This document shows positions 6,326 to 53,723 of a stretch of 64,000 nucleotides of DNA, in pieces. This stretch comes from Phallusia mammillata (lineage: Eukaryota): assembly GCA_965637545.1 (NCBI GenBank), contig OZ281495.1:18352001-18416000 (forward strand). Direction: 5' to 3'. Below the pieces are notes generated by a model. The model ran no database searches and was not told the origin of the DNA. It saw only the letters and a program-made list of their open reading frames with translations. Every line of letters starts with the position of its first letter. The stretch's first letter is position 1. The translations under genes and the position numbers were made by a program.

Positions 6326-6415
6326 GTTAATGTTGTTAAGTCCAAAATGTTTTTAGGTGTGCATCTTTCCTTTCAATTGTGGAAGATTTCCCGATTTGTG
6401 TGGACAAAACTACAG

Positions 6416-6839
6416 ATTTCAAGTAAAGACAAAAAGTCCACAAAGGGGAGTGGAACATGGTCAAGTTCTTCTGCCGTGTTCTTTTCGAAGACCCAAAACA
6501 AAACTTCCTTTTTATTCTAAGCGTGTTGAGTGGCATAAAATTAACAAACAACAAATCCGAACAAAAGTTTTAAGAAAAGAATGGATTATCGATCAAAGTT
6601 TTGGTTCATACAGGTAAGATTGTATTACACAAGCCGACGTAGTTTTTGCTTAGATTACCTTTGACAACAAATAAATGTTGTCAATATTTGCGAATTAAGG
6701 AACCGTGTATCCTTATCACCCAAAGAGGGAAATGCTTCGTTGGTTATTGAACGGTTAAAACTTTCCGATTCTGGTACATATGTCTGCGAAGTTAGGGTTG
6801 GAGTTCAAAGAAGCAGCGGTCTTGTGGTCCTGAATGTCG
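6416..6839 (+). CDS. Ig V-set domain, exons 6416-6613 and 6700-6839 (86-nt phase-2 intron)
   Basis: Spliced: GQVLLPCSF...RVEWHK...SYR|NRVSLSPKEGNASLVIERLKLSDSGTYVCEVRVGVQRSSGLVVLNV. Shows B-strand Cys, C-strand Trp and the D-x-G-x-Y-x-C motif. Donor cag|gtaag 6614, acceptor taag 6699, donor g|gtcagt 6840. Confidence 0.9.
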
Positions 6840-9800
6840 GTCAGTGGTTTTGTTGTGTGTTTTGTTTACAAGATGTACTCCATATTTGTATTATGAAATA
6901 CCCATTTGCTCACTAAAACGCTTTATCTGTGCTCCAATTTTGAACAAAATTACATATTCAATTTACTACGAGTTTGTGTTTAAAACAAGTCTTAATACTG
7001 TTAGAAATAATTTTGTTTTTGCGATTTGTAGGAAAATTTGAGAAAACAATTGCACACACAACAACGCAACGTCAAGTAAAATTGTGGAAAAACGTTACCA
7101 TCGATCATATCCTATCTACTGTTACTCCTTCAACGATAAAAAGCAGAGTAATATCCACTTCAGTCAAAAGATTTACATTTACCTTAACAGATAAATTGTC
7201 TTCGTTACTTCATTCCGACAATGTCCATGCAACTACTGGACAAACCTACAAGTTAATGACATTGACCTCATTAGGTTCATTATCATTTGTTTCAACCCAA
7301 CAAATGACCACTACAACACACACAAAAACGAGTTTAGAATTTACTTTGGACGAGTGTTCAAAAATTGTAGATCCAAATCTTTTGAGCAAATTAGTGTACA
7401 AACATGGAGAAAAAATCAAACTTCAAGGTTGTAAAGTAGTATACTTTTCAACAACAAAATCTATTCACCCCTCGTGGCTTTCCACAATACGTTCGTATGA
7501 TGAAACTACAGTATTGGTAATCACGGATTCGTTATGTCTACTTGGATCTATTCCATGTACTGTGTCGAGAAATATGAAACAAACACTTAGAAGTAGGACA
7601 GAAAGTGAAGAAATTATATCAACCTCAGTACAATTCCTTGATATTGGAAAGATGTTCACACATGAAGCTGTTTCTAAAACTGGTGATATACCTCAATCGT
7701 ATTCGGGTAAAGCAGAGAGCCAGCCAATAAACAACTTCGTGCTTTTTGGAACAAACCAGGAAGTATCTGCTGGGCCAGGTTCATTCTCTACTGATATGTT
7801 AGTACATAAGTCCAAAGCTGCATTTCATCTTGGTACATTTACAGAATATAAATTATCACAACACGTAACAATGAAAACAGCAGCCTACCAAACGCAATTG
7901 AATGATAAAAAATCGCTGATGACAATGGAAGCAATGACTTTACAAACGAGCATTGTAATACAAAATCAAACCCAACCAACGATAGTGACTGTACAGCAAA
8001 CAACTGGTAAAACAACAAAATACTTTTCTTCTACATTATCAGCTTCTGCTTCTGATAAAGTACTGATTTCTTATGCGATTTCTGATTTTAACGTTGTAAC
8101 TATAAATCCAGTTGTCACAATAATTGAATATTTTTCAAGTTTGTCTTTTGTCACAAAACCTATTTTACAGGAAACACTGCAATCAACTCACGAAAACAAG
8201 CCATTTGTCTCAAGTTTTCTCAGCATTACTCAAGAACGCATTAAAAGCTCCAATGTCATTGGCGATATTCTTACACTTCAGTCACTTACCAAAACGTTAA
8301 AAATGCGCTCATCTATTGGAAGCAAATTAGTTGCAACAATTAGTAATTATAATTATCGAAACACTACGCATGACTTTTTTTCATTTCCTACTGAGGCCAT
8401 GGAAGTAGTTTCTGACAACAAAATATCTACTACTTGGTCCGGCCGATCCATTTTGGCTCAAACGACTGCTTACAGATTTAAAGTTTCCCCCCAAACAATA
8501 CCGACGCAAATATTAGGAAATGGAAGTTTAGTTGGTGAATCCTTAGCTCCGCAATCAGTACATCATACGAAAGCAGAAACATCAACAAACACCAAGAAAG
8601 TCGTCCAAAGTTCAAGAAATAACTTCTCTGTCAATTTGTCACAAAAAGAAGAGCATTCCACTGAAACCAAGACACAATTTTGGATTTCAAATATTGCAGA
8701 TGACTCACTTTCAACTAAAGATGGAATAAAAACACATGATCTCTCAACTTCTGTGATCTTTTTTATTCCACAAACCAATGCAGTATTTCCGACGGCTTAT
8801 CCACCTTCATTCAGTCAGTATATCGGAGACGATCCAACAACTCTACACACTCCGTCACCGATAACACGTTTTGATACATATAAACATGCCGGAAACAACT
8901 TTAAAACTTCGGTTATTTCTTTTTCCCAGTTCATGTCAAACACCACGAAGATCTACAAGGTTGCTCATTCCAGTAACAACATGCAGAGAAAAAGTTTAAC
9001 AAAAATAATCCCAATAGATTCACGTGCCTCTCGCGCGACGGAACAGCCAAAAGCGAAAACGTTAACAACTGTTGAAAACTATTGGCAAATTACAAAAAAT
9101 CCTAAAACAATCATATCAAAAGAAGATTCAGATGCCACAGAGATTGCAAAAACGTTTTTGAACAAAAAAACTCTAAAAAATCTTTTAGCCACCGGAAGTG
9201 AATCGATTTTTGGGAACAACACCATAACAACTGAGCCACTAAAAGCAAAAACAGACAGCAAAACGTTTTTCATTTCACCCTCTTATCGGTACAGCAGTAC
9301 CAATAAACCATCACCATTAACCAGTAAAAGTTCAGCAGAAACAAGAACTGAAAACATCACTATCATATCGCTATTTCAAAAACGAAGAAAACCTGTTGTG
9401 CCTTCCGCATTAACGACGGAAGATATCACATCATTCAGTTCTCGAAAAGCATCAACATCCAAATCTGAAACAACAAAAATTATAACAACTGTTGAAGGAT
9501 CAACAGTAAATCCGACCAAACCCATTTCACTTATCGAATCGTCGGCATTCGAAACAACTAAAGAAATTATCTCACAAATTTTACCAACCATCACCACAAA
9601 GAAACGTGATGAAATTTTAAAAACATCTTATTCCATAAACATTACTTTAACAAAAGAAATTACTGCCACGACGAAAAAACTCCCTGGATTGTTCAAAACA
9701 AAATATTTCGAAGAAGCATTAACCACCGGAAGCGGATTGGCTGTTGATGACATTTCCACATCTGTTGGAACTGCAGCTTCAACCTCAGAAGATATTAAAG

Positions 9801-12800
9801 ATGTAACATCAGCCATTTCTCGAAAATTTCCCGCGTCAACACCCAAATCTGAACCAACAAAAACATCAGCAACCGTTGAAGGTTCAGCATTAGCTACCAA
9901 TAAAATCATTACTACTGCACCATCGCAAAAACTTGATAAAATTGTCGGAATGACACAAGAGATGTTCAGTTATGAAACAACGAGTACTATTGGTGGGCAA
10001 AGATATATTGTTCAATTCACCACAGAAATGTCGGGCATATTGGTTAGTGACGCAGATTTGACGACTGGAAGTGAATACTATGAAACCGTGTATCATGTTG
10101 TTTCCGACTACGAAAAGCTGGAGCTTTTTACAGATCACTTAACCACCAACACAACATCGAAAGTTGTAAGTTTTTCCATGGGTTCACCTGAAGTCATTTC
10201 AACTAAACCCATTTCACTTATCGAATCGTCGGCATTCGAAACAACTAAAGAAATTATCTCACAATTTTTACCAACCATCACCACAAAGAAACGTGATGAA
10301 ACTTTAAAGACATCTTATTCCATAAACATTACTTTAACAAAAGAAGTTACTGCCACGACGAAAAAACTCCCTGGATTGTTCAAAACAAAATATTTCGAAG
10401 AAGCATTAACCACCGGAAGCGGATTGGCTGTTGATAACATTTTCACATCTGTTGGAACTGCAGCTTCAACTTCAGAAGATATTAAAGATGTAACATCAGT
10501 CATTTCTCGAAAAATTCCCGCGTCAACATCCAAATCTGAACCAACAAAAACATCAACAACCGTTGAAGGTTCAGCATTAGCTACCAATAAAATCATTACT
10601 ACTGCACCATCGCAAAAACTTGATAAAATTGTCGGAACGACTCAAGAGATGTTTAGTTATGAAACGACGAGTACTATTGGTGGGCAAAGATATATTGTTC
10701 AATTCACCACAGAAATGTCGGGCATATTGGTTAGTGACGCAGATTTGACTACTGGAAGTGGATACTATGAAACCGTGTATCATGTTGTTTCCGACTACGA
10801 AAAGTTGGAGCTTTTTACAGATCACTTAACCACCAACACAACATCGAAAGTTGTAAGTTTTGCTATGGGTTCACCTGAAGTCATTTCAACTAAACCCATT
10901 TCACTTATCGAATCGTCGGCATTCGAAACAACTAAAGAAATTATCTCACAAATTTTACCAACCATCACCACAAAGAAACGTGATGAAACTTTAAAGACAT
11001 CTTATTCCATAAACATTACTTTAACAAAAGAAGTTACTGCCACGACGAAAAAACTGCCTGGATTGTTCAAAACAAAATATTTCGAAGAAGCATTAACCAC
11101 CGGAAGCGGATTGGCTGTTGATAACATTTTCACATCTGTTGGAACTGCAGCTTCAACCTCAGAAGATATTAAAGATGTAACATCAGCCATTTCTCGAAAA
11201 ATTCCCGCGTCAACATCCAAATCTGAACCAACAAAAACATCAACAACCGTTGAAGGTTCAGCATTAGCTACCAATAAAATCATTACTACTGCACCATCGC
11301 AAAAACTTGATAAAATTGTCGGAATGACTCAAGAGATGTTTAGTTATGAAACGACGAGTACTATCGGTGGGCAAAGATATATTGTTCAATTCACCACAGA
11401 AATGTCGGGCATATTGGTTAGTGACGCAGATTTGACTACTAGAAGTGGATACTATGAAACCGTGTATCATGTTGTTTCCGACTACGAAAAGTTGGAGCTT
11501 TTTACAGATCACTTAACCACCAACACAACATCGAAAGTTGTAAGTTTTGCCATGGGTTTACCTGAAGTCATTTCAACTAAACCCATTTCACTTATCGAAT
11601 CGTCGGCATTCGAAACAACTAAAGAAATTATCTCACAAACTTTACCAACCATCACCACAAAGAAACGTGATGAAACTTTGAAGACATCTTATTCCATAAA
11701 CATTACTTTACCAAAAGAAGTTACTGCCACGACGAAAAAACTCCCTGGATTGTTCAAAACAAAATATTTCGAAGAAGCATTAACCACCGGAAGCGGATTG
11801 GCTGTTGATGACATTTCCACATCTGTTGGAACTGCAGCTTCAACTTCAGAAGATATTAAAGATGTAACATCAGCCATTTCTCGAAAAATTCCCGCGTCAA
11901 CATCCAAATCTGAACCAACAAAAACATCAACAACCGTTGAAGGTTCAGCATTAGCTACCAATAAAATCATTACGGCTGCACCATCGCAAAAACTTGATAA
12001 AATTGTCGGAATGACTCAAGAGATGTTTAGTTATGAAACAACGAGTACTATTGGTGGGCAAAGATATATTGTTCAATTCACCACAGAAATGTCGGGCATA
12101 TTGGTTAGTGACGCAGATTTGACTACTGGAAGTCGATACTATGAAATCGTGTATCATGTTGTTTCCGACTACGAAAAGTTGGAGCTTTTTACAGATCACT
12201 TAACCACCAACACAACATCGAAAGTTGTAAGTTTTGCCATGGGTTTACCTGAAGTCATTTCAACTAAACCCATTTCACTTATCGAATCGTCGGCATTCGA
12301 AACAACTAAAGAAATTATCTCACAATTTTTACCAACCATCACCACAAAGAAACGTGATGAAACTTTGAAGACATCTTATTCCATAAACATTACTTTACCA
12401 AAAGAAGTTACTGCCACGACGAAAAAACTGCCTGGATTGTTCAAAACAAAATATTTCGAAGAAGCATTAACCACCGGAAGCGGATTGGCTGTTGATGACA
12501 TTTCCACATCTGTTGGAACTGCAGCTTCAACTTCAGAAGATATTAAAGATGTAACATCAGCCATTTCTCGAAAAATTCCCGCGTCAACACCCAAATCTGA
12601 ACCAACAAAAACATCAACAACCGTTGAAGGTTCAGCATTAGCTACCAATAAATTCATTACTACTGCACCATCGCAAAAACTTGATAAAATTGTCGGAATG
12701 ACTCAAGAGATGTTTGGTTATGAAACGACGAGTACTATCGGTGGGCAAAGATATATTGTTCAATTCACCACAGAAATGTCGGGCATATTGGTTAGTGACG

Positions 12801-15800
12801 CAGATTTGACTACTGGAAGTGGATACTATGAAACCGTGTATCATGTTGTTTCCGACTACGAAAAGTTGGAGCTTTTTACAGATCACTTAACCACCAACAC
12901 AACATCGAAAGTTGTAAGTTTTTCCATGGGTTCACCTGAAGTCATTTCAACTAAACCCATTTCACTTATCGAATCGTCGGCATTCGAAACAACTAAAGAA
13001 ATTATCTCACAAATTTTACCAACCATCACCACAAAGAAACGTGATGAAACTTTAAAGACATCTTATTCCATAAACATTACTTTAACAAAAGAAGTTACTG
13101 CCACGACGAAAAAACTCCCTGGATTGTTCAAAACAAAATATTTCGAAGAAGCATTAACCACCGGAAGCGGATTGGCTGTTGATGACATTTCCACATCTGT
13201 TGGAACTGCAGCTTCAACCTCAGAAGATATTAAAGATGTAACATCAGCCATTTCTCGAAAAATTCCCGCGTCAACACCCAAATCTGAACCAACAAAAACA
13301 TCAACAACCGTTGAAGGTTCAGCATTAGCTACCAATAAAATCATTACTGCTGCACCATCGCAAAAACTTGATAAAATTGTCGGAATGACTCAAGAGATGT
13401 TTAGTTATGAAACAACGAGTACTATTGGTGGGCAAAGATATATTGTTCAATTCACCACAGTAATGTCGGGCATATTGGTTAGTGACGCAGATTTGACTAC
13501 TGGAAGTCGATACTATGAAACCGTGTATCATGTTGTTTCCGACTACGAAAAGTTGGAGCTTTTTACAGATCACTTAACCACCAACACAACATCGAAAGTT
13601 GTAAGTTTTGCCATGGGTTTACCTGAAGTCATTTCAACTAAACCCATTTCACTTATCGAATCGTCGGCATTCGAAACAACTAAAGAAATTATCTCACAAT
13701 TTTTACCAACCATCACCACAAAGAAACGTGATGAAACTTTGAAGACATCTTATTCCATAAACATTACTTTACCAAAAGAAGTTACTGCCACGACGAAAAA
13801 ACTGCCTGGATTGTTCAAAACAAAATATTTCGAAGAAGCATTAACCACCGGAAGCGGATTGGCTGTTGATGACATTTCCACATCTGTTGGAACTGCAGCT
13901 TCAACTTCAGAAGATATTAAAGATGTAACATCAGCCATTTCTCGAAAAATTCCCGCGTCAACACCCAAATCTGAACCAACAAAAACATCAACAACCGTTG
14001 AAGGTTCAGCATTAGCTACCAATAAAATCATTACCACTGCACCATCGCAAAAACTTGATAAAATTGTCGGAATGACTCAAGAGATGTTTAGTTATGAAAC
14101 AACGAGTACTATTGGTGGGCAAAGATATATTGTTCAATTCACCACAGAAATGTCGGGCATATTGGTTAGTGACGCAGATTTGACTACTGGAAGTCGATAC
14201 TGTGAAACCGTGTATCATGTTGTTTCCGACTACGAAAAGTTGGAGCTTTTTACAGATCACTTAACCACCAACACAACATCGAAAGTTGTAAGTTTTGCCA
14301 TGGGTTCACCTGAAGTCATTTCAACTAAACCCATTTCACTTATCGAATCGTCGGCATTCGAAACAACTAAAGAAATTATCTCACAAATTTTACCAACCAT
14401 CACCACAAAGAAACGTGATGAAACTTTAAAGACATCTTATTCCATAAACATTACTTTACCAAAAGAAGTTACTGCCACGACGAAAAAACTCCCTGGATTG
14501 TTCAAAACAAAATATTTCGAAGAAGCATTAACCACCGGAAGCGGATTGGCTGTTGATAACATTTCCACATCTGTTGGAACTGCAGCTTCAACTTCAGAAG
14601 ATATTAAAGATGTAACATCAGCCATTTCTCGAAAAATTCCCGCGTCAACATCCAAATCTGAACCAACAAAAACATCAACAACCGTTGAAGGTTCAGCATT
14701 AGCTACCAACAAAATCATTACCACTGCACCATCGCAAAAACTTGATAAAATTGTCGGAATGACTCAAGAGATGTTTGGTTATGAAACGACGAGTACTATC
14801 GGTGGGCAAAGATATATTGTTCAATTCACCACAGAAATGTCGGGCATATTGGTTAGTGACGCAGATTTGACTACAGGAAGTGGATACTATGAAACCGTGT
14901 ATCATGTTATTTCCGACTACGAAAAGTTGGAGCTTTTTACAGATCACTTAACCACCAACACAACATCGAAAGTTGTAAGTTTTGCTATGGGTTCACCCGA
15001 AGTCATTTCAACTAAACCCATTTCACTTATCGAATCGTCGGCATTCGAAACAACCAAAGAAATTATCTCACAATTTTTACCAACCATCACCACAAAGAAA
15101 CGTGATGAAACTTTAAAGACATCTTATTCCATAAACATTACTTTACCAAAAGAAATTACTGCCACGACGAAAAAACTCCCTGGATTGTTCAAAACAAAAT
15201 ATTTTGTAGAAGGATTAACCACCGGAAGCGGATTGGCTGTTGATGACATTTCCACATCTGTTGGAACTGCAGCTTCAACTTCAGAAGATATTAAAGATGT
15301 AACATCAGCCATTTCTCGAAAAATTCCCGCGTCAACACCCAAATCTGAACCAACAAAAACATCAACAACCGTTGAAGGTTCAGCATTAGCTACCAATAAA
15401 ATCATTACTACTGCACCATCGCAAAAACTTGATAAAATTGTCGGAATGACTCAAGAGATGTTTGGTTATGAAACGACGAGTACTATCGGTGGGCAAAGAT
15501 ATATTGTTCAATTCACCACAGAAATGTCGGGCATATTGGTTAGTGACGCAGATTTGACTACTGGAAGTGGATACTATGAAACCGTGTATCATGTTGTTTC
15601 CGACTACGAAAAGTTGGAGCTTTTTACAGATCACTTAACCACCAACACAACATCGAAAGTTGTAAGTTTTTCCATGGGTTCACCTGAAGTCATTTCAACT
15701 AAACCCATTTCACTTATCGAATCGTCGGCATTCGAAACAACTAAAGAAATTATCTCACAAATTTTACCAACCATCACCACAAAGAAACGTGATGAAACTT

Positions 15801-18800
15801 TAAAGACATCTTATTCCATAAACATTACTTTAACAAAAGAAGTTACTGCCACGACGAAAAAACTGCCTGGATTGTTCAAAACAAAATATTTCGAAGAAGC
15901 ATTAACCACCGGAAGCGGATTGGCTGTTGATGACATTTCCACATCTGTTGGAACTGCAGCTTCAACTTCAGAAGATATTAAAGATGTAACATCAGCCATT
16001 TCTCGAAAAATTCCCGCGTCAACACCCAAATCTGAACCAACAAAAACATCAACAACCGTTGAAGGTTCAGCATTAGCTACCAATAAAATCATTACTGCTG
16101 CACCATCGCAAAAACTTGATAAAATTGTCGGAATGACTCAAGAGATGTTTAGTTATGAAACAACGAGTACTATTGGTGGGCAAAGATATATTGTTCAATT
16201 CACCACAGAAATGTCGGGCATATTGGTTAGTGACGCAGATTTGACTACTGGAAGTCGATACTATGAAACCGTGTATCATGTTGTTTCCGACTACGAAAAG
16301 TTGGAGCTTTTTACAGATCACTTAACCACCAACACAACATCGAAAGTTGTAAGTTTTGCCATGGGTTCACCTGAAGTCATTTCAACTAAACCCATTTCAC
16401 TTATCGAATCGTCGGCATTCGAAACAACTAAAGAAATTATCTCACAAATTTTACCAACCATCACCACAAAGAAACGTGATGAAACTTTAAAGACATCTTA
16501 TTCCATAAACATTACTTTACCAAAAGAAGTTACTGCCACGACGAAAAAACTCCCTGGATTGTTCAAAACAAAATATTTCGAAGAAGCATTAACCACCGGA
16601 AGCGGATTGGCTGTTGATAACATTTCCACATCTGTTGGAACTGCAGCTTCAACTTCAGAAGATATTAAAGATGTAACATCAGCCATTTCTCGAAAAATTC
16701 CCGCGTCAACATCCAAATCTGAACCAACAAAAACATCAACAACCGTTGAAGGTTCAGCATTAGCTACCAACAAAATCATTACCACTGCACCATCGCAAAA
16801 ACTTGATAAAATTGTCGGAATGACTCAAGAGATGTTTGGTTATGAAACGACGAGTACTATCGGTGGGCAAAGATATATTGTTCAATTCACCACAGAAATG
16901 TCGGGCATATTGGTTAGTGACGCAGATTTGACTACAGGAAGTGGATACTATGAAACCGTGTATCATGTTATTTCCGACTACGAAAAGTTGGAGCTTTTTA
17001 CAGATCACTTAACCACCAACACAACATCGAAAGTTGTAAGTTTTGCTATGGGTTCACCCGAAGTCATTTCAACTAAACCCATTTCACTTATCGAATCGTC
17101 GGCATTCGAAACAACCAAAGAAATTATCTCACAATTTTTACCAACCATCACCACAAAGAAACGTGATGAAACTTTAAAGACATCTTATTCCATAAACATT
17201 ACTTTACCAAAAGAAATTACTGCCACGACGAAAAAACTCCCTGGATTGTTCAAAACAAAATATTTTGTAGAAGGATTAACCACCGGAAGCGGATTGGCTG
17301 TTGATGACATTTCCACATCTGTTGGAACTGCAGCTTCAACTTCAGAAGATATTAAAGATGTAACATCAGCCATTTCTCGAAAAATTCCCGCGTCAACACC
17401 CAAATCTGAACCAACAAAAACATCAACAACCGTTGAAGGTTCAGCATTAGCTACCAATAAAATCATTACTACTGCACCATCGCAAAAACTTGATAAAATT
17501 GTCGGAATGACTCAAGAGATGTTTGGTTATGAAACGACGAGTACTATCGGTGGGCAAAGATATATTGTTCAATTCACCACAGAAATGTCGGGCATATTGG
17601 TTAGTGACGCAGATTTGACTACTGGAAGTCGATACTATGAAACCGTGTATCATGTTGTTTCCGACTACGAAAAGTTGGAGCTTTTTACAGATCACTTAAC
17701 CACCAACACAACATCGAAAGTTGTAAGTTTTTCCATGGGTTCACCTGAAGTCATTTCAACTAAACCCATTTCACTTATCGAATCGTCGGCATTCGAAACA
17801 ACTAAAGAAATTATCTCACAAATTTTACCAACCATCACCACAAAGAAACGTGATGAAACTTTAAAGACATCTTATTCCATAAACATTACTTTAACAAAAG
17901 AAGTTACTGCCACGACGAAAAAACTGCCTGGATTGTTCAAAACAAAATATTTCGAAGAAGCATTAACCACCGGAAGCGGATTGGCTGTTGATGACATTTC
18001 CACATCTGTTGGAACTGCAGCTTCAACTTCAGAAGATATTAAAGATGTAACATCAGCCATTTCTCGAAAAATTCCCGCGTCAACACCCAAATCTGAACCA
18101 ACAAAAACATCAACAACCGTTGAAGGTTCAGCATTAGCTACCAATAAAATCATTACTGCTGCACCATCGCAAAAACTTGATAAAATTGTCGGAATGACTC
18201 AAGAGATGTTTAGTTATGAAACAACGAGTACTATTGGTGGGCAAAGATATATTGTTCAATTCACCACAGAAATGTCGGGCATATTGGTTAGTGACGCAGA
18301 TTTGACTACTGGAAGTCGATACTATGAAACCGTGTATCATGTTATTTCCGACTACGAAAAGTTGGAGCTTTTTACAGATCACTTAACCACCAACACAACA
18401 TCGAAAGTTGTAAGTTTTGCCATGGGTTTACCTGAAGTCATTTCAACTAAACCCATTTCACTTATCGAATCGTCGGCATTCGAAACAACTAAAGAAATTA
18501 TCTCACAAATTTTACCAACCATCACCACAAAGAAACGTGATGAAACTTTAAAGACATCTTATTCCATAAACATTACTTTACCAAAAGAAGTTACTGCCAC
18601 GACGAAAAAACTCCCTGGATTGTTCAAAACAAAATATTTCGAAGAAGCATTAACCACCGGAAGCGGATTGGCTGTTGATGACATTTCCACATCTGTTGGA
18701 ACTGCAGCTTCAACTTCAGAAGATATTAAAGATGTAACATCAGCCATTTCTCGAAAAATTCCCGCGTCAACATCCAAATCTGAACCAACAAAAACATCAA

Positions 18801-33800: not shown

Positions 33801-36800
33801 CCACATCTGTTGGAACTGCAGCTTCAACTTCAGAAGATATTAAAGATGTAACATCAGCCATTTCTCGAAAAATTCCTGCGTCAACATCCAAATCTGAACC
33901 AACAAAAACATCAACAACCGTTGAAGGTTCAGCATTCGCTACTAATAAAATCATTACCATTGCACCATCGCAAAAACTTGATAAAATTGTCGGAATGACT
34001 CAAGAGATGTTTAGTTATGAAACAACGAGTACTATTGGTGGGCAAAGATATATTGTTCAATTCACCACAGAAATGTCAGGCATATTGGTTAGTGACGCAG
34101 ATTTGACTACTGGAAGTGGATACTATGAAACCGTGTATCATGTTGTTTCCGACTACGAAAAGTTGAAGCTTTTTACAGATCACTTAACCACCAACACAAC
34201 ATCGAAAGTTGTAAGTTTTGCTATGGGTTCACCTGAAGTCATTTCAACTAAACCCATTTCACTTATCGAATCGTCGGCATTCGAAACAACCAAAGAAATT
34301 ATCTCACAAATTTTACCAACCATCACCACAAAGAAACGTGATGAAACTTTAAAGACATCTTATTCCATAAACATTACTTTACCAAAAGAAGTTACTGCCA
34401 CGACGAAAAAACTCCCTGGATTGTTCAAAACAAAATATTTCGAAGAAGCATTAACCACCGGAAGCGGATTGGCTGTTGATAACATTTCCACATCTGTTGG
34501 AACTGCAGCTTCAACTTCAGAAGATATTAAAGATGTAACATCAGCCATTTCTCGAAAAATTCCCGCGTCAACATCCAAATCTGAACCAACAAAAACATCA
34601 ACAACCGTTGAAGGTTCAGCATTCGCTACTAATAAAATCATTACCATTGCACCATCGCAAAAACTTGATAAAATTGTCGGAATGACTCAAGAGATGTTTA
34701 GTTATGAAACAACGAGTACTATTGGTGGGCAAAGATATATTGTTCAATTCACCACAGAAATGTCAGGCATATTGGTTAGTGACGCAGATTTGACTACTGG
34801 AAGTGGATACTATGAAACCGTGTATCATGTTGTTTCCGACTACGAAAAGTTGAAGCTTTTTACAGATCACTTAACCACCAACACAACATCGAAAGTTGTA
34901 AGTTTTGCTATGGGTTCACCTGAAGTCATTTCAACTAAACCCATTTCACTTATCGAATCGTCGGCATTCGAAACAACCAAAGAAATTATCTCACAAATTT
35001 TACCAACCATCACCACAAAGAAACGTGATGAAACTTTAAAAACATCTTATTCCATAAACATTACTTTAACAAAAGAAGTTACTGCCACGACGAAAAAACT
35101 CCCTGGATTGTTCAAAACAAAATATTTCGAAGAAGGATTAACCACCGGAAGCGGATTGGCTGTTGATGACATTTCCACATCTGTTGGAACTGCAGCTTCA
35201 ACTTCAGAAGATATTAAAGATGTAACATCAGCCATTTCTCGAAAAATTCCCGCGTCAACATCCAAATCTGAACCAACAAAAACATCAACAACCGTTGAAG
35301 GTTCAGCATTAGCTACCAATAAAATCATTACTACTGCACCATCGCAAAAACTTGATAAAATTGTCGGAATGACTCAAGAGATGTTTGGTTATGAAATGAC
35401 GAGTACTATCGGTGGGCAAAGATATATTGTTCAATTCACCACAGAAATGTCGGGCATATTGGTTAGTGACGCAGATTTGACTACTGGAAGTGGATACTAT
35501 GAAACCGTGTATCATGTTGTTTCCGACTACGAAAAGTTGGAGCTTTTTACAGATCACTTAACCACCAACACAACATCGAAAGTTGTAAGTTTTGCTATGG
35601 GTTCACCCGAAGTCATTTCAACTAAACCCATTTCACTTATCGAATCGTCGGCATTCGAAACAACTAAAGAAATTATCTCACAATTTTTACCAACCATCAC
35701 CACAAAGAAACGTGATGAAACTTTAAAGACATCTTATTCCATAAACATTACTTTACCAAAAGAAGTTACTGCCACGACGAAAAAACTCCCTGGATTGTTC
35801 AAAACAAAATATTTCGAAGAAGCATTAACCACCGGAAGCGGATTGGATGTTGATAACATTTCCACATCTGTTGGAACTGCAGCTTCAACTTCAGAAGATA
35901 TTAAAGATGTAACATCAGCCATTTCTCGAAAAATTCCTGCGTCAACATCCAAATCTGAACCAACAAAAACATCAACAACCGTTGAAGGTTCAGCATTCGC
36001 TACTAATAAAATCATTACCATTGCACCATCGCAAAAACTTGATAAAATTGTCGGAATGACTCAAGAGATGTTTAGTTATGAAACAACGAGTACTATTGGT
36101 GGGCAAAGATATATTGTTCAATTCACCACAGAAATGTCAGGCATATTGGTTAGTGACGCAGATTTGACTACTGGAAGTGGATACTATGAAACCGTGTATC
36201 ATGTTGTTTCCGACTACGAAAAGTTGAAGCTTTTTACAGATCACTTAACCACCAACACAACATCGAAAGTTGTAAGTTTTGCTATGGGTTCACCTGAAGT
36301 CATTTCAACTAAACCCATTTCACTTATCGAATCGTCGGCATTCGAAACAACCAAAGAAATTATCTCACAAATTTTACCAACCATCACCACAAAGAAACGT
36401 GATGAAACTTTAAAGACATCTTATTCCATAAACATTACTTTAACAAAAGAAGTTACTGCCACGACGAAAAAACTCCCTGGATTGTTCAAAACAAAATATT
36501 TCGAAGAAGGATTAACCACCGGAAGCGGATTGGCTGTTGATGACATTTCCACATCTGTTGGAACTGCAGCTTCAACTTCAGAAGATATTAAAGATGTAAC
36601 ATCAGCCATTTCTCGAAAAATTCCCGCGTCAACATCCAAATCTGAACCAACAAAAACATCAACAACCGTTGAAGGTTCAGCATTAGCTACCAATAAAATC
36701 ATTACTACTGCACCATCGCAAAAACTTGATAAAATTGTCGGAATGACTCAAGAGATGTTTAGTTATGAAATGACGAGTACTATCGGTGGGCAAAGATATA

Positions 36801-39800
36801 TTGTTCAATTCACCACAGAAATGTCGGGCATATTGGTTAGTGACGCAGATTTGACTACTGGAAGTGGATACTATGAAACCGTGTATCATGTTGTTTCCGA
36901 CTACGAAAAGTTGGAGCTTTTTACAGATCACTTAACCACCAACACAACATCGAAAGTTGTAAGTTTTGCCATGGGTTTACCCGCAGTCATTTCAACTAAA
37001 CCCATTTCACTTATCGAATCGTCGGCATTCGAAACAACTAAAGAAATTATCTCACAAATTTTACCAACCATGACCACAAAGAAACGTGATGAAACTTTAC
37101 AGACATCTTATTCCACGAACATTACTTTACCGAAAGAAATCACTTCCACGACGAAAAAACTCCCTGGATTGTTCAAAACAAAATATTTCGAAGAAGGATT
37201 AACCACCGGAAGCGGATTGGCTGTTGATGACATTTCCACATCTGTTGGAACTGCAGCTTCAACCTTAGAAGATATTAAAGATGTAACATCAGCAATTTCT
37301 CGAAAAATTCCCGCGTCAACACCCAAATCTGAACCAACAAAAACATCAACAACCGTTGAAGGTTCAGCATTCGCTACTAATGAAATCATTACTGCTGCAC
37401 CATCGCAAACATTTGATAAAATTGTCGGAATGACTCAAGAGATGTTTAGTTATGAAACGACGAGTACTATCGATGGGCAAAGATATATTATTCAATTCAC
37501 CACAGAAATGTCGGGCATATTGGTTAGTGACGCAGATTTGACTACTGGAAGTGGATACTATGAAACCGTGTATGATGTTGTTTCCGACTCCGAAAAGTTG
37601 GAAGTTGTTACAGATCACTTAACCACCAACTCAACATCGAAAGTTGTAAGTTTTGCCATGGGTTTAACTGAAGTCATTTCAACTACACCCATTTCACTTA
37701 TCGAATCGTCGGCATTCGAAACAACTAAAGAAATTATTTCACAAATTTTGTTAACCACCTCTCCCAAGAAACGTGATGAAACTTTAGAAAGATATTTTTC
37801 TATAAACATTACTTTATCAGAAGAAATTACTGCCACGACGAAAAAACTCCCTGGATTGTTCAAAACAAAATATTTCGAAGAAGCATTTTCAACCGGAAGC
37901 GGATTGACTGTTGATGACATTTCTACATCTGTTGGAACTGCAGCTTCAACCTCAGAAGATATTAAAGAAGCAACATCAGCCATTTCTCGAAAAATTCCCG
38001 CGTCAACACCCAAATCTGAACCAACAAAAACATCAACAACCGTTGAAGGTTCAGCATTCGCTACTAATAAAATCATTACTGCTGCACCATCGCAAACATT
38101 TGATAAAATTGTCGGAATGACTCAAGAGATGTTTAGTTATGAAACGACGAGTACTATCGGTGAGCAAAGATATATTGTTCAATTCACCACAGAAATGTCG
38201 GGCATATTGGTTAGTGACGCAGATTTGACTACTGGAAGTCGATACTATGAAACCGTGTATCATGTTGTTTCCGACCACGAAAAGTTGGAGCTTTTTACAG
38301 ATCACTTATCCACCAACTCAACATCGAAAGTTGTAAGTTTTGCCATGGGTTTAACTGAAGTCATTTCAACTACACCCATTTCACTTATCGAATCGTCGGC
38401 ATTCGAAACAACTAAAGAAATTATCTCACAAATTTTACCAACCACCACCACAAAGAAACGTGATGAATCTTTAAAGACATCTTATTCCACAAACATTACT
38501 TTACCAAAAGAAATCACTGCCACGACGAAAAAACTCCCTGGATTGTTCAAAACAAAATATTTCGAAGAAGGATTAACCACCGGAAGCGGATTGGATGTTG
38601 ATGACATTTCCACATCTGTTGGAATTGCACCTTCAACTTCAGAAGATATTAAAGATGTAACATCAGCCATTTCTCGAAAAATTCCCGCGTCAACACCCAA
38701 ATCTGAACCAACAAAAACATTAACAACCGTTGAAGGTTCAGCATTAGCTACCAATAAAACCATTACTGCTGCACCATCGCAAAAACTTGATAAAATTGTC
38801 GGAATGACACAAGAGATGTTTAGTTATGAAACGACGAGTACTATCGGTTGGCAAAGATATATTGTTCAATTCACCACAGAAATGTCGGGCATATTGGTTA
38901 GTGACGCAGATTTGACTACTGGAAGTGGATACTATGAAACCGTGTATGATGTTGTTTCCGACTACGAAAAGTTGGAAGTTGTTACAGATCACTTAACCAC
39001 CAACTCAACATCGAAAGTTGTAAGTTTTGCCATGGGTTTAACTGAAGTCATTTCAACTACACCCATTTCACTTATCGAATCGTCGGCATTCGAAACAACT
39101 GAAGAAATTATTTCACAAATTTTGTTAACCACCTCTCCCAAGAAACGTGATGAAACTTTAGAAAGATATTTTTCTATAAACATTACTTTATCAGAAGAAA
39201 TTACTGCCACGACGAAGAAACTCCCTGGATTGTTCAAAACAAAATATTTCGAAGAAGCATTTTCAACCGGAAGCGGATTGACTGTTGATGACATTTCTAC
39301 ATCTGTTGGAACTGCAGCTTCAACCTCAGAAGACATTAAAGATGTCACATCAATTAGCTCCAAACAAAGTCCAGCTTCAACACTTAATCCTAAACCAAGA
39401 AATGTATCATCAATTTTTGAAAGTTCAACAGTTTCTCTTACTCCCATTACAATTTTAACCACTGCACAAGTTCAAAAAAGGATTAGCATCTTGCCACCAA
39501 CACAGGCGACGTATTGTTGTGAAACGACTACTATAATCGATTTGCTGAGATACCATGCTCTATCAGAAGTTGAAACGTTTGTTATTGAGATGACTTTGGC
39601 TACTCCAGCTGGATATTTGGAAACTGATTTGATGTTTATTTCTGACTACGTAACCTGGGCATATTTTTCAGATCATTTAATGTCGGACACAACCGAAGTG
39701 CTTGAAAGTTTTTTCACGGAATCGGTTGATGTTATAACTTACCTACCTTATTCACTTTTCGAATTCACCGTTTTTGAAACAGCCATACAAAGTACTTTAA

Positions 39801-42800
39801 AAAGTTTTGTAATCCCCAGTCCTAAGAAACGTGATAACACTTCCAAAATATTTGTTCATCATTACCGAACGGAACCAGTTGATGCGGGAGTCATGACAGG
39901 AACCCGGGCTATTTATACCAAATATATCCAAGGTGGTTTCGTAATTGTAACAGAATTCCCATTTGATTACCGTTCTACTTTGACGTACCTTCCACTACCC
40001 ATAACGTATGTTGAAAATGCTTTTTCATTCCGCTCTGGTCAACGCACTCTGCCACTTCATAAATCTGAAACTCCAAAAAGTTTGTCAATTCTTGAAGATT
40101 TCTCAGTTTCTTTGTCTGACGTTATAAGCAGTACATCGATACAGTTACTTGGTAAACTAGTATACAGTACACAATTGGCTTTTAGTACTAGAAAGACTAC
40201 CACCGGTATCCAAGCACTCTGGCTCAAATCCCACACCGAGATTTCTGACATAGTGATCCACAATACGTCTTTGGCTACAGAGAGGAAGAGCGCTTTTTAT
40301 GTTGTTTCCGGCGATGATATGTCGATGTTTACATACGAGTTAATCTCGAATATGAAAGATATTTCTACAGTTGTTTTTGTTACTACAAAAGAAACTATTG
40401 TAACTAAATCAGTTTTAACTTTCGAATCGTCTATTTTCGACACATCTAAAGAAAGCAAACTAATAACTACAACCACCAATACTGAAATATTTGATGAAAG
40501 TTTGAAATTTAGCAATTCATTTTCTTTTGAACTTAGTGCCCCCTTAAGCTCTAGTGTTATAAAAAAAACTAAATCAGTCACCTTGACGATGGTCCCGACA
40601 ACTTATTTTTCCATCTATACATCAAAAAAAAGGGAAACTAACAAATCCTTAACATCATCATTTTTTTATCCTGAAACTAGCAAGATTGCTATAACAGAAA
40701 AGCGTGCTTGGGAAGTCGAACATGTTTCTGTTGCTTATTTGAGCACTCTACAAACCGAAAAAACTACACCAGTGAAAACCGTATCGACATTAGAAACTTT
40801 TACTCCTTCAGTCGCTGAATTCGTTTCTGTTTCCTTTTTTGGCATTATATACAACGTACCTGGAAATTTAAGCACTATTTCAATTCATTTTACCATCCCG
40901 ACCATACCATCATATTCAAGCTTTCGTTTAAAAACGTACCATGAAGTTTGGACATTGTCTTTTATACAATTACCCACCAGCAAGACAACTACCAAAATAT
41001 TTAAGAGTTTAGGTGGGGGATCACCCTATGTAACAGTAAAAACAATTGTAACTGACGAAATTCATGTTACTACAAAAATGTTAAACAATACCCTGACGAT
41101 CCCTAGTAGCAAAGAACTTGTTACTACAACTTTTTTACAAACGAATATGTTTTCGACTTACATACATGCAACACCTGTATGGTTGAATACGGCGACTCTG
41201 GCGGATACATCGGGAATAAACTTAACAGTTGTTGATCGTTATGCCACTCCAAAGATTACAATCTTGCCAATACTATCTGACATTCATCTTTCAAGTCGGA
41301 ATTATTTTTTTGTTCAGTCAACATACACTACGTCTCCGGAGTATTTGTCATCAACTCCCTACTCAAATTTTACACTGGAGCAAGCGTTGTCACAAACTTA
41401 TGTTCGCCCAAGTTCGACCTTCACTGAGTTACCATCGCCCCTGTCAAAGACGTTGAGAACCCTTAGTTTCTTTAAATCGATGAAATCACTAAAACAAACT
41501 CTTCATACTACCACCAAAGACACACATTCGAAGGTTTTATCAGTTGCCAGTTTCATCGACGAGACAAAACTTAACAAGATGGTGTTGAAAACAGAAAAAC
41601 CTGTTGAAGGTCAATCGTTTTCAGTTTCAAACATTTTATCTTCAACCACTTCAAAAATGTTTTATCAAAAACCATTGTATGGGACAACAAGCAAAGTTGC
41701 AGTTTATCAGTCTCTAACAAAGGATGCTGGTTTAAGTGGAGTCAGTGAGTTCGCTTCATCAGTTTATGTTGCGGAAACAATTCGATCGTGGACACTTGAA
41801 GTCATTGCCGTTACTACAGTTCCAACCACGATCATTTCTCTCTCTAGTACTACAAAAGACATAAAATCTGTGTTGTCGATAAGAAGGGAAGAGTATGACA
41901 TAGGAACGTTTGTTGCGACAACCAACACAAACAACATATCTCGAACATTTTCGTTGCAAAGGTCTTTGCAAGGTCCAGGTACGCTGCCACGCACAGACGA
42001 GCAGAAAATATCTGCATACATCAGAGCATTCACGAAAGCCAGTGGGGCAAGGTTTTTTACCTCTATTGATATAGAAACAAGAAAATACGATAACGTAACT
42101 TTGTCAAAACCCATAGCATTTTATGGAGATGTAACATCTTTTTTTCCCCCTGGAAAATACTACAATAAAGCAAAAACAGTTACTGGTGCAACAGAATTTT
42201 TAATATCCGTTTTGGTTTCTAATTATTCAAGCTATGCAAAATATGCAAAAGGCTTAGAAACAAGCTCAAGTCCCAGTATTGTTACTAAAACGGTTTCGGA
42301 TTATATCACTGTTGCACAAACAACAAGACCGGTAACTTTTACTTCGAAGACTAATGTTAAATACAGCACGATTTCTTTGCAAATATTACCACTAACATCA
42401 GAAAGTTTTAGAGAAGGTATGATCTCTTATAAGACAGATTACAAGTTGGAAGAACTACAAACTGCAGCAATTTCTTCAACGCAGCTATTTACAAACATTG
42501 AAGGTCTTGGAGGTGTGACAAAATCGAAACCAGCGACAGTAAGTTTACAAGTTGTACAATTGTCATCAGAATTTCAACAACCAACTGCCAGATCACAAAG
42601 CGTTTTATCGCGTAAGACGATGACACCTCAAACATATTTCAATCCGTTTATGGCCACAACCTCATCTTTTAATTTATTTTTGCTGCTTCAAACCATTTCA
42701 AATGTTGTAGTTACCACCACATTACCAAAGACAAGCGATGTCAGCAATAGGTCCACCCCACTGATTTATTGGGTATATTTGCACGAAAAGGAAGATGACG

Positions 42801-45800
42801 CTTTGACAAAAACAAAAACAGTCAGTATTAGTCCGGATATCGCAGTGTTGCCTTCTGGCGATCAACGGACTCTAAATGTAAGCTACACACTTGTCCGACA
42901 GGAAAAAAACCTTTTTAAGACCAAAACCTGGACTAAATCCCTTTTATCAAAACCTGGGATGTCTAAGTCTGTCACAGCAACAGAGAAGAAAACTGATATA
43001 CACACTGAAAAATTATATTTTCAAGTTTTTGCGACGACTTTCGTTACAAAAGTGGAACCCTTCAAAACTGAACTGACAACAATATATTTGTTAGTCGGTT
43101 TAAAAACTCTTGCTGAAAAATTGTACAAACCAACGCTGGGGACGCAAATTCATAAAGAAACAAGCACTTTACTTTTATTGGAGTCCAAAGCAACAAAACC
43201 TTTTCTCACAGCCGTTGTCACAACAACAGCTGCAAAATACATTTTTGTTGCAGTTGTTGCACAAATCTCCACGAATCCTTATTTTCCTAAACATAAAACG
43301 GTTTCGCAAAAAACGTTGTTTAAAAGCCATCTATTAAAAACCACAGAACCATTTTTTCCAGAAGTTCAAGATTATCGCAACACCCCTTTTGAAACGTTAA
43401 CCAAGACGTTCTCTTATCAGCAGCTTTTAACATCTGAATTTACAACTACGGCACGAACGGTATACATTCGAGGCATTGACATTGGATCTATTAGAAATTT
43501 GTTGTATTCGACTGTACCTTCAAAAGGAACAATCGCAGAAAAGTCGTCACATATTATATCTACGACAGGCACAAGTCGAAGTGAAGTCTTAACAGAACTG
43601 ACAATTTTAAGTGAAGCTTCATTACCCTCCAAAACAATTGTTTTTCATGCAGAAACTGTTTCAGTTGTCCAATCCATCGCTAGCATCACTACAAGCAAAT
43701 ACCAACTAACTTTGACAAAAATAAAGACTAGAGAAACTCTTCGGCCAAATGTTCCTATATGTAAGCAACTAGCTTATGTACCGTAACCTGGTTGTGTTGT
43801 AGCAAACTATTATTTTTTTTTAAAGTACCAAGATGTCCTCTTGATGCTTGTCAAAACGGCGGAACTTGTGTTATGGACGGTTTTACAGATTTTTACTGTA
43901 TATGTCCTCCTGGTCTTGTAGGAAAAACATGTGAAATAGGTAATTCTTTTATTCGACATCCTATATGTGAAAAATATTTGCTATTCCTTTTTTAGACGAT
44001 GACGAGTGCTACTACATGAATGATTTCTGTGATCATTCATGTATTAACACCTTTGGTTCGTATGAGTGTTTATGCAGAAATGGATTTTACCTTGGAAAGG
44101 ATAAAACAACATGCATTGGTAGGATTTTAATGTTTAATGTACATGCACTAAATCAGACCGTGACAGACTAAAAATAAGGTCCAATAATCAACAACCAAGA
44201 ATAAAACTTGCAATTTTTAAATAATGGTTCATCAAACGATTTCTACCCTTAACGGTACGAATTGCATAAAACCCCTGACAAATGTGTTGTTAGTAAAAGT
44301 TTTGTAAACGTTAGATACGGACGAATGTTTGGACGAAACCTTAAACAAGTGTGCACATTACTGCAATAATACTGCTGGAAGTTATACTTGCTCTTGCCGC
44401 CGTGGACACACGCTGGGCGACGACGAACTTACATGCAAAGGTTGTTGTTGTTTTATAAAACAAGCATTACCGGCACAAAAAATAATACAAAATATTTTAG
44501 CTAACTTTCTATGACGGTTTTTATAACGTTTTGTCTGGTTGTTTTTGTTGGTGTATATTAATTCATAACAAACAAAAAATACTTAAATACTGCATTTAAA
44601 AAAAATCGTCCATAAAGTAACACTTAGGCTATAAGAACAAAAATTAATAGAACAAAACTTCTCCCCAATTTATTGTTTCATGAATATGTACAAAACATAT
44701 TTTTGTTTATGTTCAAATAGTTGTTGATTATTGTCGTTCCGACCCCTGCCAAAACAACGGTCTATGTCATTCACGTGAAGGACGATACTATTGTATTTGT
44801 CCCAGCGGATTTACAGGATTTCGATGTGAAGTCGGTACGTAAACTTGACGTATTTAAATATGGTTTGATTAACCTTTTTCTGCATAGATTTGTCGATTCC
44901 ATGCAGTAAAGGATGGAGAAAATTTCAGGGATTTTGTTATTTTTTTCCAAAAACAAAAAGACGAACATGGAAAGACGCAAATCGGTATTGCCGAAACAAT
45001 TACGGTGCTTCTCTAGTGAGCATTCACTCGACTAACGAGAGCAAGTATCTTGCAAGTAAGCAGCATGCAATATAAACGCAGAAAGATTACCTATAACCGA
45101 CGCAATTGAGGCGATCTCATGAAAGCTCGTTTAGAAGGGCGCTTGTGGGAACGAGTCCCGAGAATAGACACGACGGAAATACCTGACAAACACAACAATT
45201 ACGTTCTAAACCAGAGGTCACCAAACTATTTTCGCTGCGGGCCAGATAAGTATACAATGAATCGCGCGGACCGCATAGTTTACGTGGCCTGCGGCGTCTT
45301 TCCAAATTTAGCCCGCGAGGCGATTTTTATAAGGAAGACAAAATTTGGCCTTTCTACAATCCCATTTAAAATCGCCTGTTACGCTCTATTTCTATAGTCT
45401 TTATCATAAGAGCAATGCTTGTATATTACGTTACAAGTAACAAAAGAAGGCAATTGTTTGCGCACAATTAACACTTGTAGTCATGTCTGTGACGTAGCAA
45501 ACTGGCTCCGGATCCGGCCCACGGGCCGTAGTTTGCTGACCTGTGTTCTATCCGTTCTATATGTTGACCATTCATAGTAACATTCAAGAAAATATGAGAG
45601 ACTTTTTCCTGGAAAAGCTTGTCTATTCCGCTTCAACCTTATGCCCAAACCCAACCCGACTTACAACTTTAATTTGATGGGGCCGGCTTTTTAAGGCGGT
45701 TCAGATTTAGGCTGGTTTCGGACAGAGGTTTTTTTGAAAAAAAAACGAGCTTGTTTTATGTATCTATTCACAATCGGACACATTTGTGTCGTAATTTTAA

Positions 45801-53523: not shown

Positions 53524-53723
53524 NNNNNNNNNNNNNNNNNNNNNNNNNNNNNNNNNNNNNNNNNNNNNNNNNNNNNNNNNNNNNNNNNNNNNNNNNNNNN
53601 NNNNNNNNNNNNNNNNNNNNNNNNNNNNNNNNNNNNNNNNNNNNNNNNNNNNNNNNNNNNNNNNNNNNNNNNNNNNNNNNNNNNNNNNNNNNNNNNNNNN
53701 NNNNNNNNNNNNNNNNNNNNNNN
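53524..53723. other. Assembly gap (200 N)
   Basis: Run of exactly 200 n, consistent with a fixed-size scaffold spacer. Confidence 0.99.

What the first reader, a model, noticed from the sequence alone, without database searches (positions are those of the whole stretch)
7032..43760. A single 36,729-nt coding exon
Seen: canonical splice sites at 7031 and 43761 bracket an uninterrupted stop-free frame of 12,243 codons, while neighbouring introns are only 53-192 nt. Known: the largest human coding exons (TTN, AHNAK, MUC16) are roughly 17-22 kb, so this would exceed them. How it is recognised in a short-intron genome is an open question; intron definition is the likely route (inference). The predicted core protein is about 1.4 MDa before glycosylation.
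Basis: partly seen in the sequence, partly recalled or inferred. Interest (0 to 1): 0.78.

Follow-up and report, generated by a model that had tools for sequence, protein, structure and literature searches.

The report
Giant repeat exon in sea-squirt proteoglycan gene
A 36.7-kb stretch really is one unbroken coding exon, made mostly of 45 copies of a 229-residue unit, in the middle of a gene for a huge secreted protein. Exons this size are already known in human mucin genes, and no RNA evidence exists yet for this one.

Summary
One + strand frame is stop-free from 6944 to 43783 (12,280 codons). Canonical AG/GT sites bound an exon at 7032-43760 (36,729 nt), in phase 1 at both ends. The open frame starts at 7034, not 7032.

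About 84% of the exon is a tandem array: 43 near-identical 687-nt units (mean 97.65% identity, no indels) plus 2 degenerate units. The "12,243 codons" therefore amount to roughly 2,500 independent codons, which is still far beyond chance.

The frame looks selected. There are 0 stop-creating variants among 133 unit variants (5 expected, P=0.007). Contig sets from three sequencing studies show no indels in the 4.2 kb of unique exon laid; both indels seen lie in introns.

The gene reads Ig V-set, giant Ser/Thr-rich exon, 4 EGF, a C-type lectin domain in three exons, 5 sushi repeats, then stop. That is about 12,970 aa and 1.4 MDa. It resembles a lectican but has no link modules. It is too proline-poor for a classical mucin domain.

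No relatives of the exon were found, and no public RNA run holds it.

Copy number and splicing remain untested. This scan has already noted other giant exons in this genome, on other DNA.

The parts
2119..2165 (+). Candidate first coding exon (ATG plus a hydrophobic signal-peptide-like stretch). Weak.
   Evidence: A script search for ATG + hydrophobic core + phase-compatible donor found it, and it keeps the whole model in frame. It lies between inverted 20-nt tandem arrays at 1660-1842 and 3471-3621, so it may belong to a foldback element. A second candidate starts at 5361. The 5' end is unresolved.
6416..6613 (+). Ig V-set domain, first exon (an alternative acceptor would start it at 6357)
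   Evidence: Sequence and splice sites. No Pfam hit on its own, but it carries the first half of the V-set pattern that continues in the next exon.
6700..6839 (+). Ig V-set domain, second exon; ends in phase 1
   Evidence: Pfam V-set E=1.2e-6 and I-set E=2.8e-5; splice sites.
6840..7031 (+). 192-nt intron before the giant exon
   Evidence: GT at 6840, AG at 7030-7031.
7032..43760 (+). The giant exon: 36,729 nt, phase 1 to phase 1, 12,242 whole codons, product 1.329 MDa
7032..9520 (+). Non-repeated N-terminal part of the exon (829 codons), Ser/Thr-rich, no known domain
   Evidence: Pfam: nothing above cut-off. Word search: no relatives. Composition.
9521..39061 (+). Tandem array of 43 units of 687 nt (229 aa): mean pairwise identity 97.65%, no indels, local 2- and 3-unit higher-order patterns
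39062..40405 (+). Two degenerate units (44th and 45th; 56% and 25% aa identity to a core unit)
   Evidence: phmmer/jackhmmer self-search; alignment A1.
40406..43760 (+). Non-repeated C-terminal part of the exon (1,118 codons), single copy in the genome
   Evidence: Present unspliced in contigs from three independent studies with 8 SNPs, 0 indels and 0 stops.
43761..43825 (+). 65-nt intron after the giant exon
   Evidence: One individual carries a 2-nt deletion here.
43826..44834 (+). Four EGF exons, all phase 1-1: 43826-43939 EGF, 43996-44118 EGF_CA, 44315-44440 EGF_CA, 44721-44834 EGF
   Evidence: Pfam E=1.4e-9, 4.1e-8, 1.1e-8, 7.6e-10; boundaries.
44888..47732 (+). C-type lectin domain in three exons (44888-45055, 47406-47509, 47594-47732), with a 2,350-nt first internal intron
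   Evidence: Pfam Lectin_C on all three. Best solved-structure match of the third exon is the aggrecan C-type lectin domain, 1tdq_B, E=4.9e-13. The first exon matches mannose-receptor-family lectin domains best.
47817..49047 (+). Five sushi (CCP) exons (47817-47996, 48060-48236, 48297-48476, 48617-48802, 48860-49044) and the stop codon at 49045-49047. No transmembrane segment follows.
   Evidence: Pfam Sushi; sequence; model.

Best explanation
This is a genuine, very large internal coding exon of a gene for a secreted, lectican-like giant glycoprotein.

The exon grew by tandem amplification of a 687-nt (229-aa) unit. Unequal crossing-over or gene conversion still homogenises the array: the central units are nearly identical and the edge units have diverged. 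Selection acts mainly on keeping the frame open and the composition similar, not on individual residues.

Inferred, not shown:
- The central region is an extended carrier of O-glycans and/or glycosaminoglycans. It has about 30% Ser+Thr and 127 Ser-Gly sites.
- It holds the lectin/EGF/sushi end far from the Ig end, as the central domains of versican and aggrecan or mucin domains do.
- The exon is spliced by pairing sites across its short flanking introns (intron definition).
- Because it is phase 1-1, skipping it would give an in-frame short form, like versican V3.
For: Shown by the sequence:
- It is the single long open frame in the window.
- Canonical splice sites sit in matching phase with the flanking Ig and EGF exons. 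A 16-exon model has no internal stop and 12,970 codons.

The frame is selected:
- Among 133 variant alleles between units there are 40 synonymous, 93 non-synonymous and 0 stop changes. Neutral expectation is 36/92/5, so P(0 stops)=0.007. There is not one indel in 29.5 kb of array.
- In contigs from four runs of three studies, the 4.2 kb of unique exon laid shows 8 SNPs, no indel and no stop. The two indels seen in the stretch both fall in introns.
- Synonymous codon usage of the unique parts matches the domain exons better in the open frame (r=0.74) than in the other frames (0.46-0.63).

The array looks evolved, not mis-assembled:
- Only six unit pairs are identical. Variants form a mosaic with 2- and 3-unit local patterns, and the edge units are diverged.
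- The longest exact self-match is 2,582 nt.
- All 44 genomic matches to the unit lie in this one locus.
- Contigs from three studies all break at about 39.2-39.3 kb, which is the array edge.

Flanking domains are confirmed by Pfam and by solved structures.
Against: - No RNA evidence. None of the public RNA-type runs of this organism holds words of 39600-44900, so transcription and the two splice junctions are unconfirmed.
- Within the array dN/dS is about 0.92, so there is no residue-level constraint.
- No relative of any part of the exon was found: 0 hits in 1.84 billion representative proteins and 0 hits in two word searches. Conservation therefore cannot support coding.
- The unit has no confident fold (pLDDT 30) and no Pfam or Atlas match.
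- Copy number was not tested, because only contigs were available, not reads.
- The 5' end of the gene is not fixed.
Confidence: 0.7

Rival explanations
1. The array is real but its length in the assembly is wrong, or is only one allele of a highly length-polymorphic repeat. The exon is then giant but not necessarily 36.7 kb.
For: Repeat exons of mucins vary greatly in length between human haplotypes (PMC13345508). Units 22-26 form an exactly repeated two-unit block with a 2,582-nt exact self-match, the kind of place where copy number changes or assemblers slip. Short-read contigs of all runs break at the array edge, so nothing here spans the array.
Against: Units differ at 133 variant alleles and only six pairs are identical, so accurate reads longer than about 3.3 kb place uniquely. 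There are no indels at all, which would be unusual for a mis-assembled noisy region. No stray copies lie on other contigs.
Confidence: 0.2
2. The open frame is real, but the mature mRNA usually lacks most or all of it. Either the phase 1-1 exon is skipped (a short Ig-EGF-lectin-sushi form, like versican V3), or internal cryptic introns are removed.
For: The exon is symmetrical in phase, so skipping stays in frame. Versican makes V1, V2 and V3 by skipping its large central exons (PMC4859157). No RNA run holds the exon's 3' part.
Against: If the exon were never translated, 36.7 kb would not stay free of stops and indels. A constitutive internal intron of any length would have accumulated stops, and none exists in frame.
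Confidence: 0.15
3. It is not a functioning coding exon. It could be a recently amplified satellite that happens to derive from an open unit, or a gene that has just lost expression.
For: dN/dS is about 0.92 among units. There are no relatives, no RNA holder and no predicted fold.
Against: The 5.8 kb of non-repeated sequence inside the exon is also stop-free in the same frame, while the other frames carry 553 and 895 stops. Stops are absent among 133 unit variants where about 5 are expected. There are no indels in the array or in other individuals' unique exon part, while introns nearby do carry indels. Splice phases fit the neighbouring domain exons exactly. Codon usage fits the open frame best.
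Confidence: 0.07

Closest known systems
Hyalectans / lecticans (aggrecan, versican, neurocan, brevican)
   Same: The three-part plan matches: an N-terminal Ig-containing end, a long poorly conserved central glycan-bearing region encoded by one or two very large exons, and a C-terminal EGF, C-type lectin and sushi block followed directly by the stop (PMC4859157). The lectin domain is split over three exons and the domain exons are in phase 1. The lectin's third exon is closest to the aggrecan lectin domain among solved structures. Ser-Gly sites are abundant.
   Different: There are no link (Xlink) modules after the Ig domain or anywhere detectable, so there is no predicted hyaluronan-binding G1. 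It has four EGF and five sushi repeats instead of two and one. The central exon is about 7 times the size of versican's largest and is built from a 229-aa unit with no similarity to vertebrate central domains.
Mucin repeat exons (human MUC12, MUC4, MUC16, MUC3A)
   Same: A single enormous exon made of tandem repeats that keeps an open frame with little residue-level constraint, is rich in Ser/Thr, and is probably variable in length. MUC12 alleles reach 23,080 aa and MUC4 repeat alleles reach 27,843 bp (PMC13345508).
   Different: Proline is only 3.6%, and no 100-aa window reaches 40% Ser+Thr with 5% Pro. Hydrophobic residues make up 30%. The unit is long (229 aa). There are no VWD, SEA or transmembrane domains. 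The flanking domains are lectican-like.
Selectins
   Same: They use the same module set: C-type lectin, EGF and a run of sushi repeats.
   Different: Selectins have the order lectin-EGF-sushi and a transmembrane anchor. Here the order is EGF-lectin-sushi and the protein ends without an anchor.
Other giant exons noted in this genome by the scan (for example a 17.2-kb mucin exon, s1-388441)
   Same: Same genome and the same theme of very large repeat-bearing exons in secreted proteins between short introns (unverified AI notes).
   Different: Those are VWF/mucin-type genes with cysteine-rich beads. This exon is cysteine-free, twice as long, and sits in a lectican-like frame.

Membership tests
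Hyalectan (lectican) proteoglycans | N-terminal G1: an Ig-like repeat followed by link (Xlink) modules that bind hyaluronan | tested here: not met
   The Ig V-set is present. The next exon is the giant exon, and its N-terminal 829 aa have no Xlink hit. PF00193 found nothing at E<=0.001 in the whole genome: 15 candidates were scored, the search works exon by exon, and no positive control rang. No coding-looking exons lie in the 15 kb upstream.
Hyalectan (lectican) proteoglycans | [quoted passage not shown] | tested here: met
   The order is EGF x4, Lectin_C (three exons), Sushi x5, stop. The numbers differ from the vertebrate 2-1-1.
Hyalectan (lectican) proteoglycans | Central domain carrying chondroitin or keratan sulfate chains | not testable with these tools
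   There are 127 Ser-Gly dipeptides, 76 of them Gly-Ser-Gly, about two per unit next to acidic residues. Attachment itself needs biochemistry.
Hyalectan (lectican) proteoglycans | Orthology of the G3 block to vertebrate lecticans (sequence tree, shared exon phases) | tested here: inconclusive
   The third lectin exon is closest to the aggrecan lectin domain (E=4.9e-13), but the first exon is closest to mannose-receptor-family lectin domains. I confirmed the three lectin exons and phase-1 domain borders. I did not compare them with vertebrate gene structures. No tree was built.
Mucins (PTS-domain glycoproteins) | A domain rich in Pro, Thr and Ser. One published threshold is Ser+Thr >=20% and Pro >=5% (quoted in PMC2515642). 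A stricter window rule of 40%/5% is from my memory. | tested here: not met
   Ser+Thr is 29.8%, which passes 20%. Pro is 3.6%, which fails 5%. None of 1,215 windows of 100 aa reaches 40% Ser+Thr with 5% Pro.
Mucins (PTS-domain glycoproteins) | Tandem repeats encoded in one large central exon with an open frame maintained | tested here: met
   45 units in one exon, no stops, no indels.
Mucins (PTS-domain glycoproteins) | VWD/cystine-knot ends (gel-forming mucins) or SEA plus a transmembrane segment (tethered mucins) | tested here: not met
   Pfam finds only Ig, EGF, Lectin_C and Sushi around the exon and nothing inside it. The protein ends five residues after the last sushi cysteine.

The most novel reading that the evidence does not exclude
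The gene is an expressed tunicate counterpart of the vertebrate lectican scaffold: an Ig end and an EGF-lectin-sushi end with vertebrate-like exon phases, but without link modules. Its central domain has been blown up by a young 687-nt repeat into a roughly 39-kb mRNA and a 1.4-MDa core protein. The exon would be spliced purely by intron definition, and skippable as a cassette. That would place the lectican frame before the acquisition of hyaluronan binding, and would give one of the largest constitutive coding exons documented outside human mucins.
Probability: 0.3. Interest if true: 0.65.

Novelty: new variant of a known kind. Interest (0 to 1): 0.45.

Why it matters
If expressed as assembled, this is a natural test case for how far intron-definition splicing, transcription and translation scale: a 36.7-kb exon, a roughly 39-kb mRNA and a 12,970-aa product in a compact chordate genome.

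It is also a lectican-like protein without link modules in the sister group of vertebrates. That bears on how the vertebrate hyaluronan-binding proteoglycans were assembled from modules.

It is not a record-breaking exon. The repeat-exon principle is well known from mucins and lecticans.

Tried and rejected
- Tandem Repeats Finder missed the array because the period of 687 exceeds its 500 limit. The array was defined by script instead.
- A DNA search of the unit in the own genome could not be scored because there were too many candidates. The protein-mode search worked.
- Pfam gave only sub-threshold noise on all three parts of the exon. The ESM Atlas feature search gave no usable hit. AlphaFold2 on a 7-row alignment of units gave pLDDT 30, so no fold search was attempted.
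- All protein searches were blank: HMMER with 1,200 aa (units 43-45 plus the start of the unique C-terminal part) against 1.84 billion representatives; a word search for giant relatives using the last 1,433 aa; and a word search with the N-terminal 829 aa.
- An iterated self-search for more degenerate units in the unique flanks found only units 44 and 45.
- The RNA evidence search found six runs holding the stretch, none on record as RNA; the four laid gave only unspliced contigs with no joints. Copy number could not be read from contigs.
- The signal-peptide exon search gave two weak candidates, at 2119 and 5361, and no decision.
- I rejected the reading of a non-coding satellite and the reading of two separate genes. 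The exon has no start or stop of its own, and its phases fit both neighbours.
- The joined (spliced) protein was never sent to any search. Exons were searched one by one by reference. The joined model was only translated inside a script to check the frame.
Full report
**1. Observation**

The window has exactly one long open frame on either strand: + strand, 6944..43783, 12,280 codons.
- An AG sits at 7030-7031 and a GT at 43761-43762.
- Read from 7032 itself the frame has 553 stops. The open frame is offset by two bases. The exon therefore starts with the last two bases of a split codon and ends with the first base of another, which is phase 1 on both sides.
- That phase matches the Ig exon before it (6700-6839, ending in phase 1) and the EGF exon after it (43826-43939).
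- The flanking introns are 192 and 65 nt. The others in the gene are 53-280 nt, apart from one of 2,350 nt inside the lectin domain and a candidate first intron of 4,250 nt.

**2. How much of the length is independent evidence**

- Tandem Repeats Finder saw nothing because the period exceeds 500.
- By script, a 229-aa motif recurs at exactly 229-residue spacing 44 times. A 687-nt self-shift gives 95-100% identity from 9519 to about 38,600.
- There are 43 full units at 9521-39061. Mean pairwise identity is 97.65%, there is no indel, and only six pairs are identical.
- Two degenerate units follow, reaching 40405.
- The stop-free frame therefore rests on about 2,500 independent codons: 829 N-terminal, one unit, and 1,118 C-terminal plus the degenerate units. 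With 553 and 895 stops in the other two frames over the same span, this is still overwhelmingly non-random.

**3. Is the frame kept by selection?**

- Within the array I counted 133 variant alleles relative to the unit consensus: 40 synonymous, 93 non-synonymous, 0 stop. A neutral expectation with the observed transition/transversion ratio gives 36/92/5. P(0 stops) is 0.007 and dN/dS is about 0.92.
- The residues drift almost freely, but stops and all indels are absent from 29.5 kb. This is the signature of repeat exons, where length, frame and composition matter more than residue identity.
- Contigs from four runs of three studies lie unspliced on 39600-44900; none of these runs is on record as RNA.
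- They differ from the window at eight places inside the exon: three synonymous, five non-synonymous, no stop. None is an indel.
- The only two indels in the stretch, at 43811 and 44625, both fall in introns.
- Synonymous codon usage of the unique exon parts correlates with that of the flanking domain exons best in the open frame: r=0.74 against 0.46-0.63.

**4. Is the array an assembly artefact?**

This cannot be settled without reads, but the internal evidence argues against it.
- The units form a mosaic of variant combinations with local two- and three-unit higher-order patterns: 8-9-10 resembles 11-12-13, units 22-26 alternate exactly, and 35/36 resembles 38/39.
- Units 41-43 are more diverged, and unit 44 is half converted.
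- The longest exact self-match is 2,582 nt, so accurate reads of a few kb place uniquely.
- All 44 matches to the unit in the 240-Mb assembly lie in this one locus. The unique C-terminal part is single-copy.
- Contigs from three studies all stop at about 39.2-39.3 kb, where the repeat begins.
- Copy number may well be polymorphic, as in human mucin repeat exons (PMC13345508).

**5. The gene**

- Upstream lie two exons of an Ig V-set domain (Pfam E=1.2e-6).
- Downstream lie EGF, EGF_CA, EGF_CA, EGF, a C-type lectin domain in three exons, five sushi repeats and a stop at 49045-49047. There is no membrane anchor.
- A 16-exon model has no internal stop and 12,970 codons. All domain borders are in phase 1.
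- The first exon is uncertain. The candidate at 2119-2165 reads as a signal peptide and fits the phase, but it lies between inverted 20-nt tandem arrays.
- The 15 kb upstream of the window shows nothing that looks coding.
- The joined protein was used only for this frame check in a script. Every search was made exon by exon, by reference.

**6. The exon product**

- It has 12,242 residues, a mass of 1.329 MDa and a pI of 5.7.
- Composition is Ser+Thr 29.8%, Pro 3.6%, hydrophobic residues 30%, and 7 cysteines.
- It has 127 Ser-Gly sites (76 of them Gly-Ser-Gly) and 121 N-glycosylation sequons.
- It fails the proline criterion used for mucin PTS domains. No 100-aa window reaches 40% Ser+Thr with 5% Pro.
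- Nothing identifies it: no Pfam family, no Atlas look-alike, no confident fold (pLDDT 30 on a shallow alignment), and no relative in any of the three protein searches. It looks lineage-specific and fast-evolving.

**7. Comparison with known systems**

- The frame is that of a hyalectan (lectican): Ig end, huge glycan-bearing middle on a giant exon, then EGF-lectin-sushi and stop (PMC4859157).
- The last lectin exon is closest to the aggrecan lectin domain among solved structures.
- The defining link modules are absent after the Ig domain. PF00193 found nothing in the genome. That negative is weak, because the search is exon by exon, no control rang, and the literature reports a link protein in Ciona (PMC12383584). 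I therefore do not file it as a lectican.
- It works like a mucin repeat exon but is not a classical mucin.
- Selectins share the modules but in another order and with an anchor.

**8.

- The size comparison is out of date. [quoted passage not shown]
- That a large exon between short introns is handled by intron definition is the textbook expectation rather than an open question.
- The 1.4-MDa estimate is right.
- Transcription is unsupported. No public RNA-type run of this organism holds the 3' part of the exon. This may only mean that the expressing adult tissue has not been sampled.

**9. Earlier notes of this scan**

These are unverified AI notes.
- One notes that the lectin exon phases match the lectican G3 block (s1-408762). 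I confirmed the three lectin exons and their phases.
- Others call the organism a sea squirt and describe other giant exons in this genome, for example a 17.2-kb exon (s1-388441, s1-355925).
- So very large repeat exons have been found before by the scan, on other DNA of this genome.

**10. Verdict**

This is a real feature and almost certainly a true coding exon of a new lectican-like, link-less giant glycoprotein gene. It is large but not beyond known exon sizes. Expression, internal splicing and exact copy number remain to be shown.

Noticed in passing
window 1660-1842 and 3471-3621: Two arrays of a 20-nt tandem repeat in inverted orientation, about 1.6 kb apart. This is a foldback-like structure. 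The candidate signal-peptide exon (2119-2165) lies between them.
   Followed up: partly
window 5683-5969; also about 55.8-56.0 kb and L002:1695-1940: A 136-nt unit, repeated about twice in tandem, that contains a tRNA-like B-box motif. Similar translated stretches recur elsewhere in and upstream of the window, so it is probably a tRNA-derived SINE family.
   Followed up: no
window 56785-57033 (+): A fragment of a piggyBac-type transposase (Pfam DDE_Tnp_1_7, E=3.8e-12). It covers only profile positions 99-163, so it is a remnant.
   Followed up: partly
window 53524-53723: A 200-base run of N (assembly gap or mask), 4.5 kb downstream of the gene's stop codon. Left untouched.
   Followed up: no
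window 45056-47405: The first intron inside the lectin domain is 2,350 nt, far longer than the gene's other internal introns (53-280 nt). It holds several short open frames that look like repeat-element debris.
   Followed up: no
window 39062-39748 versus 37688-38374: The first about 97 residues of degenerate unit 44 are almost identical to unit 42, while its second half is strongly diverged. This points to a gene-conversion or crossover breakpoint in the middle of the unit.
   Followed up: partly
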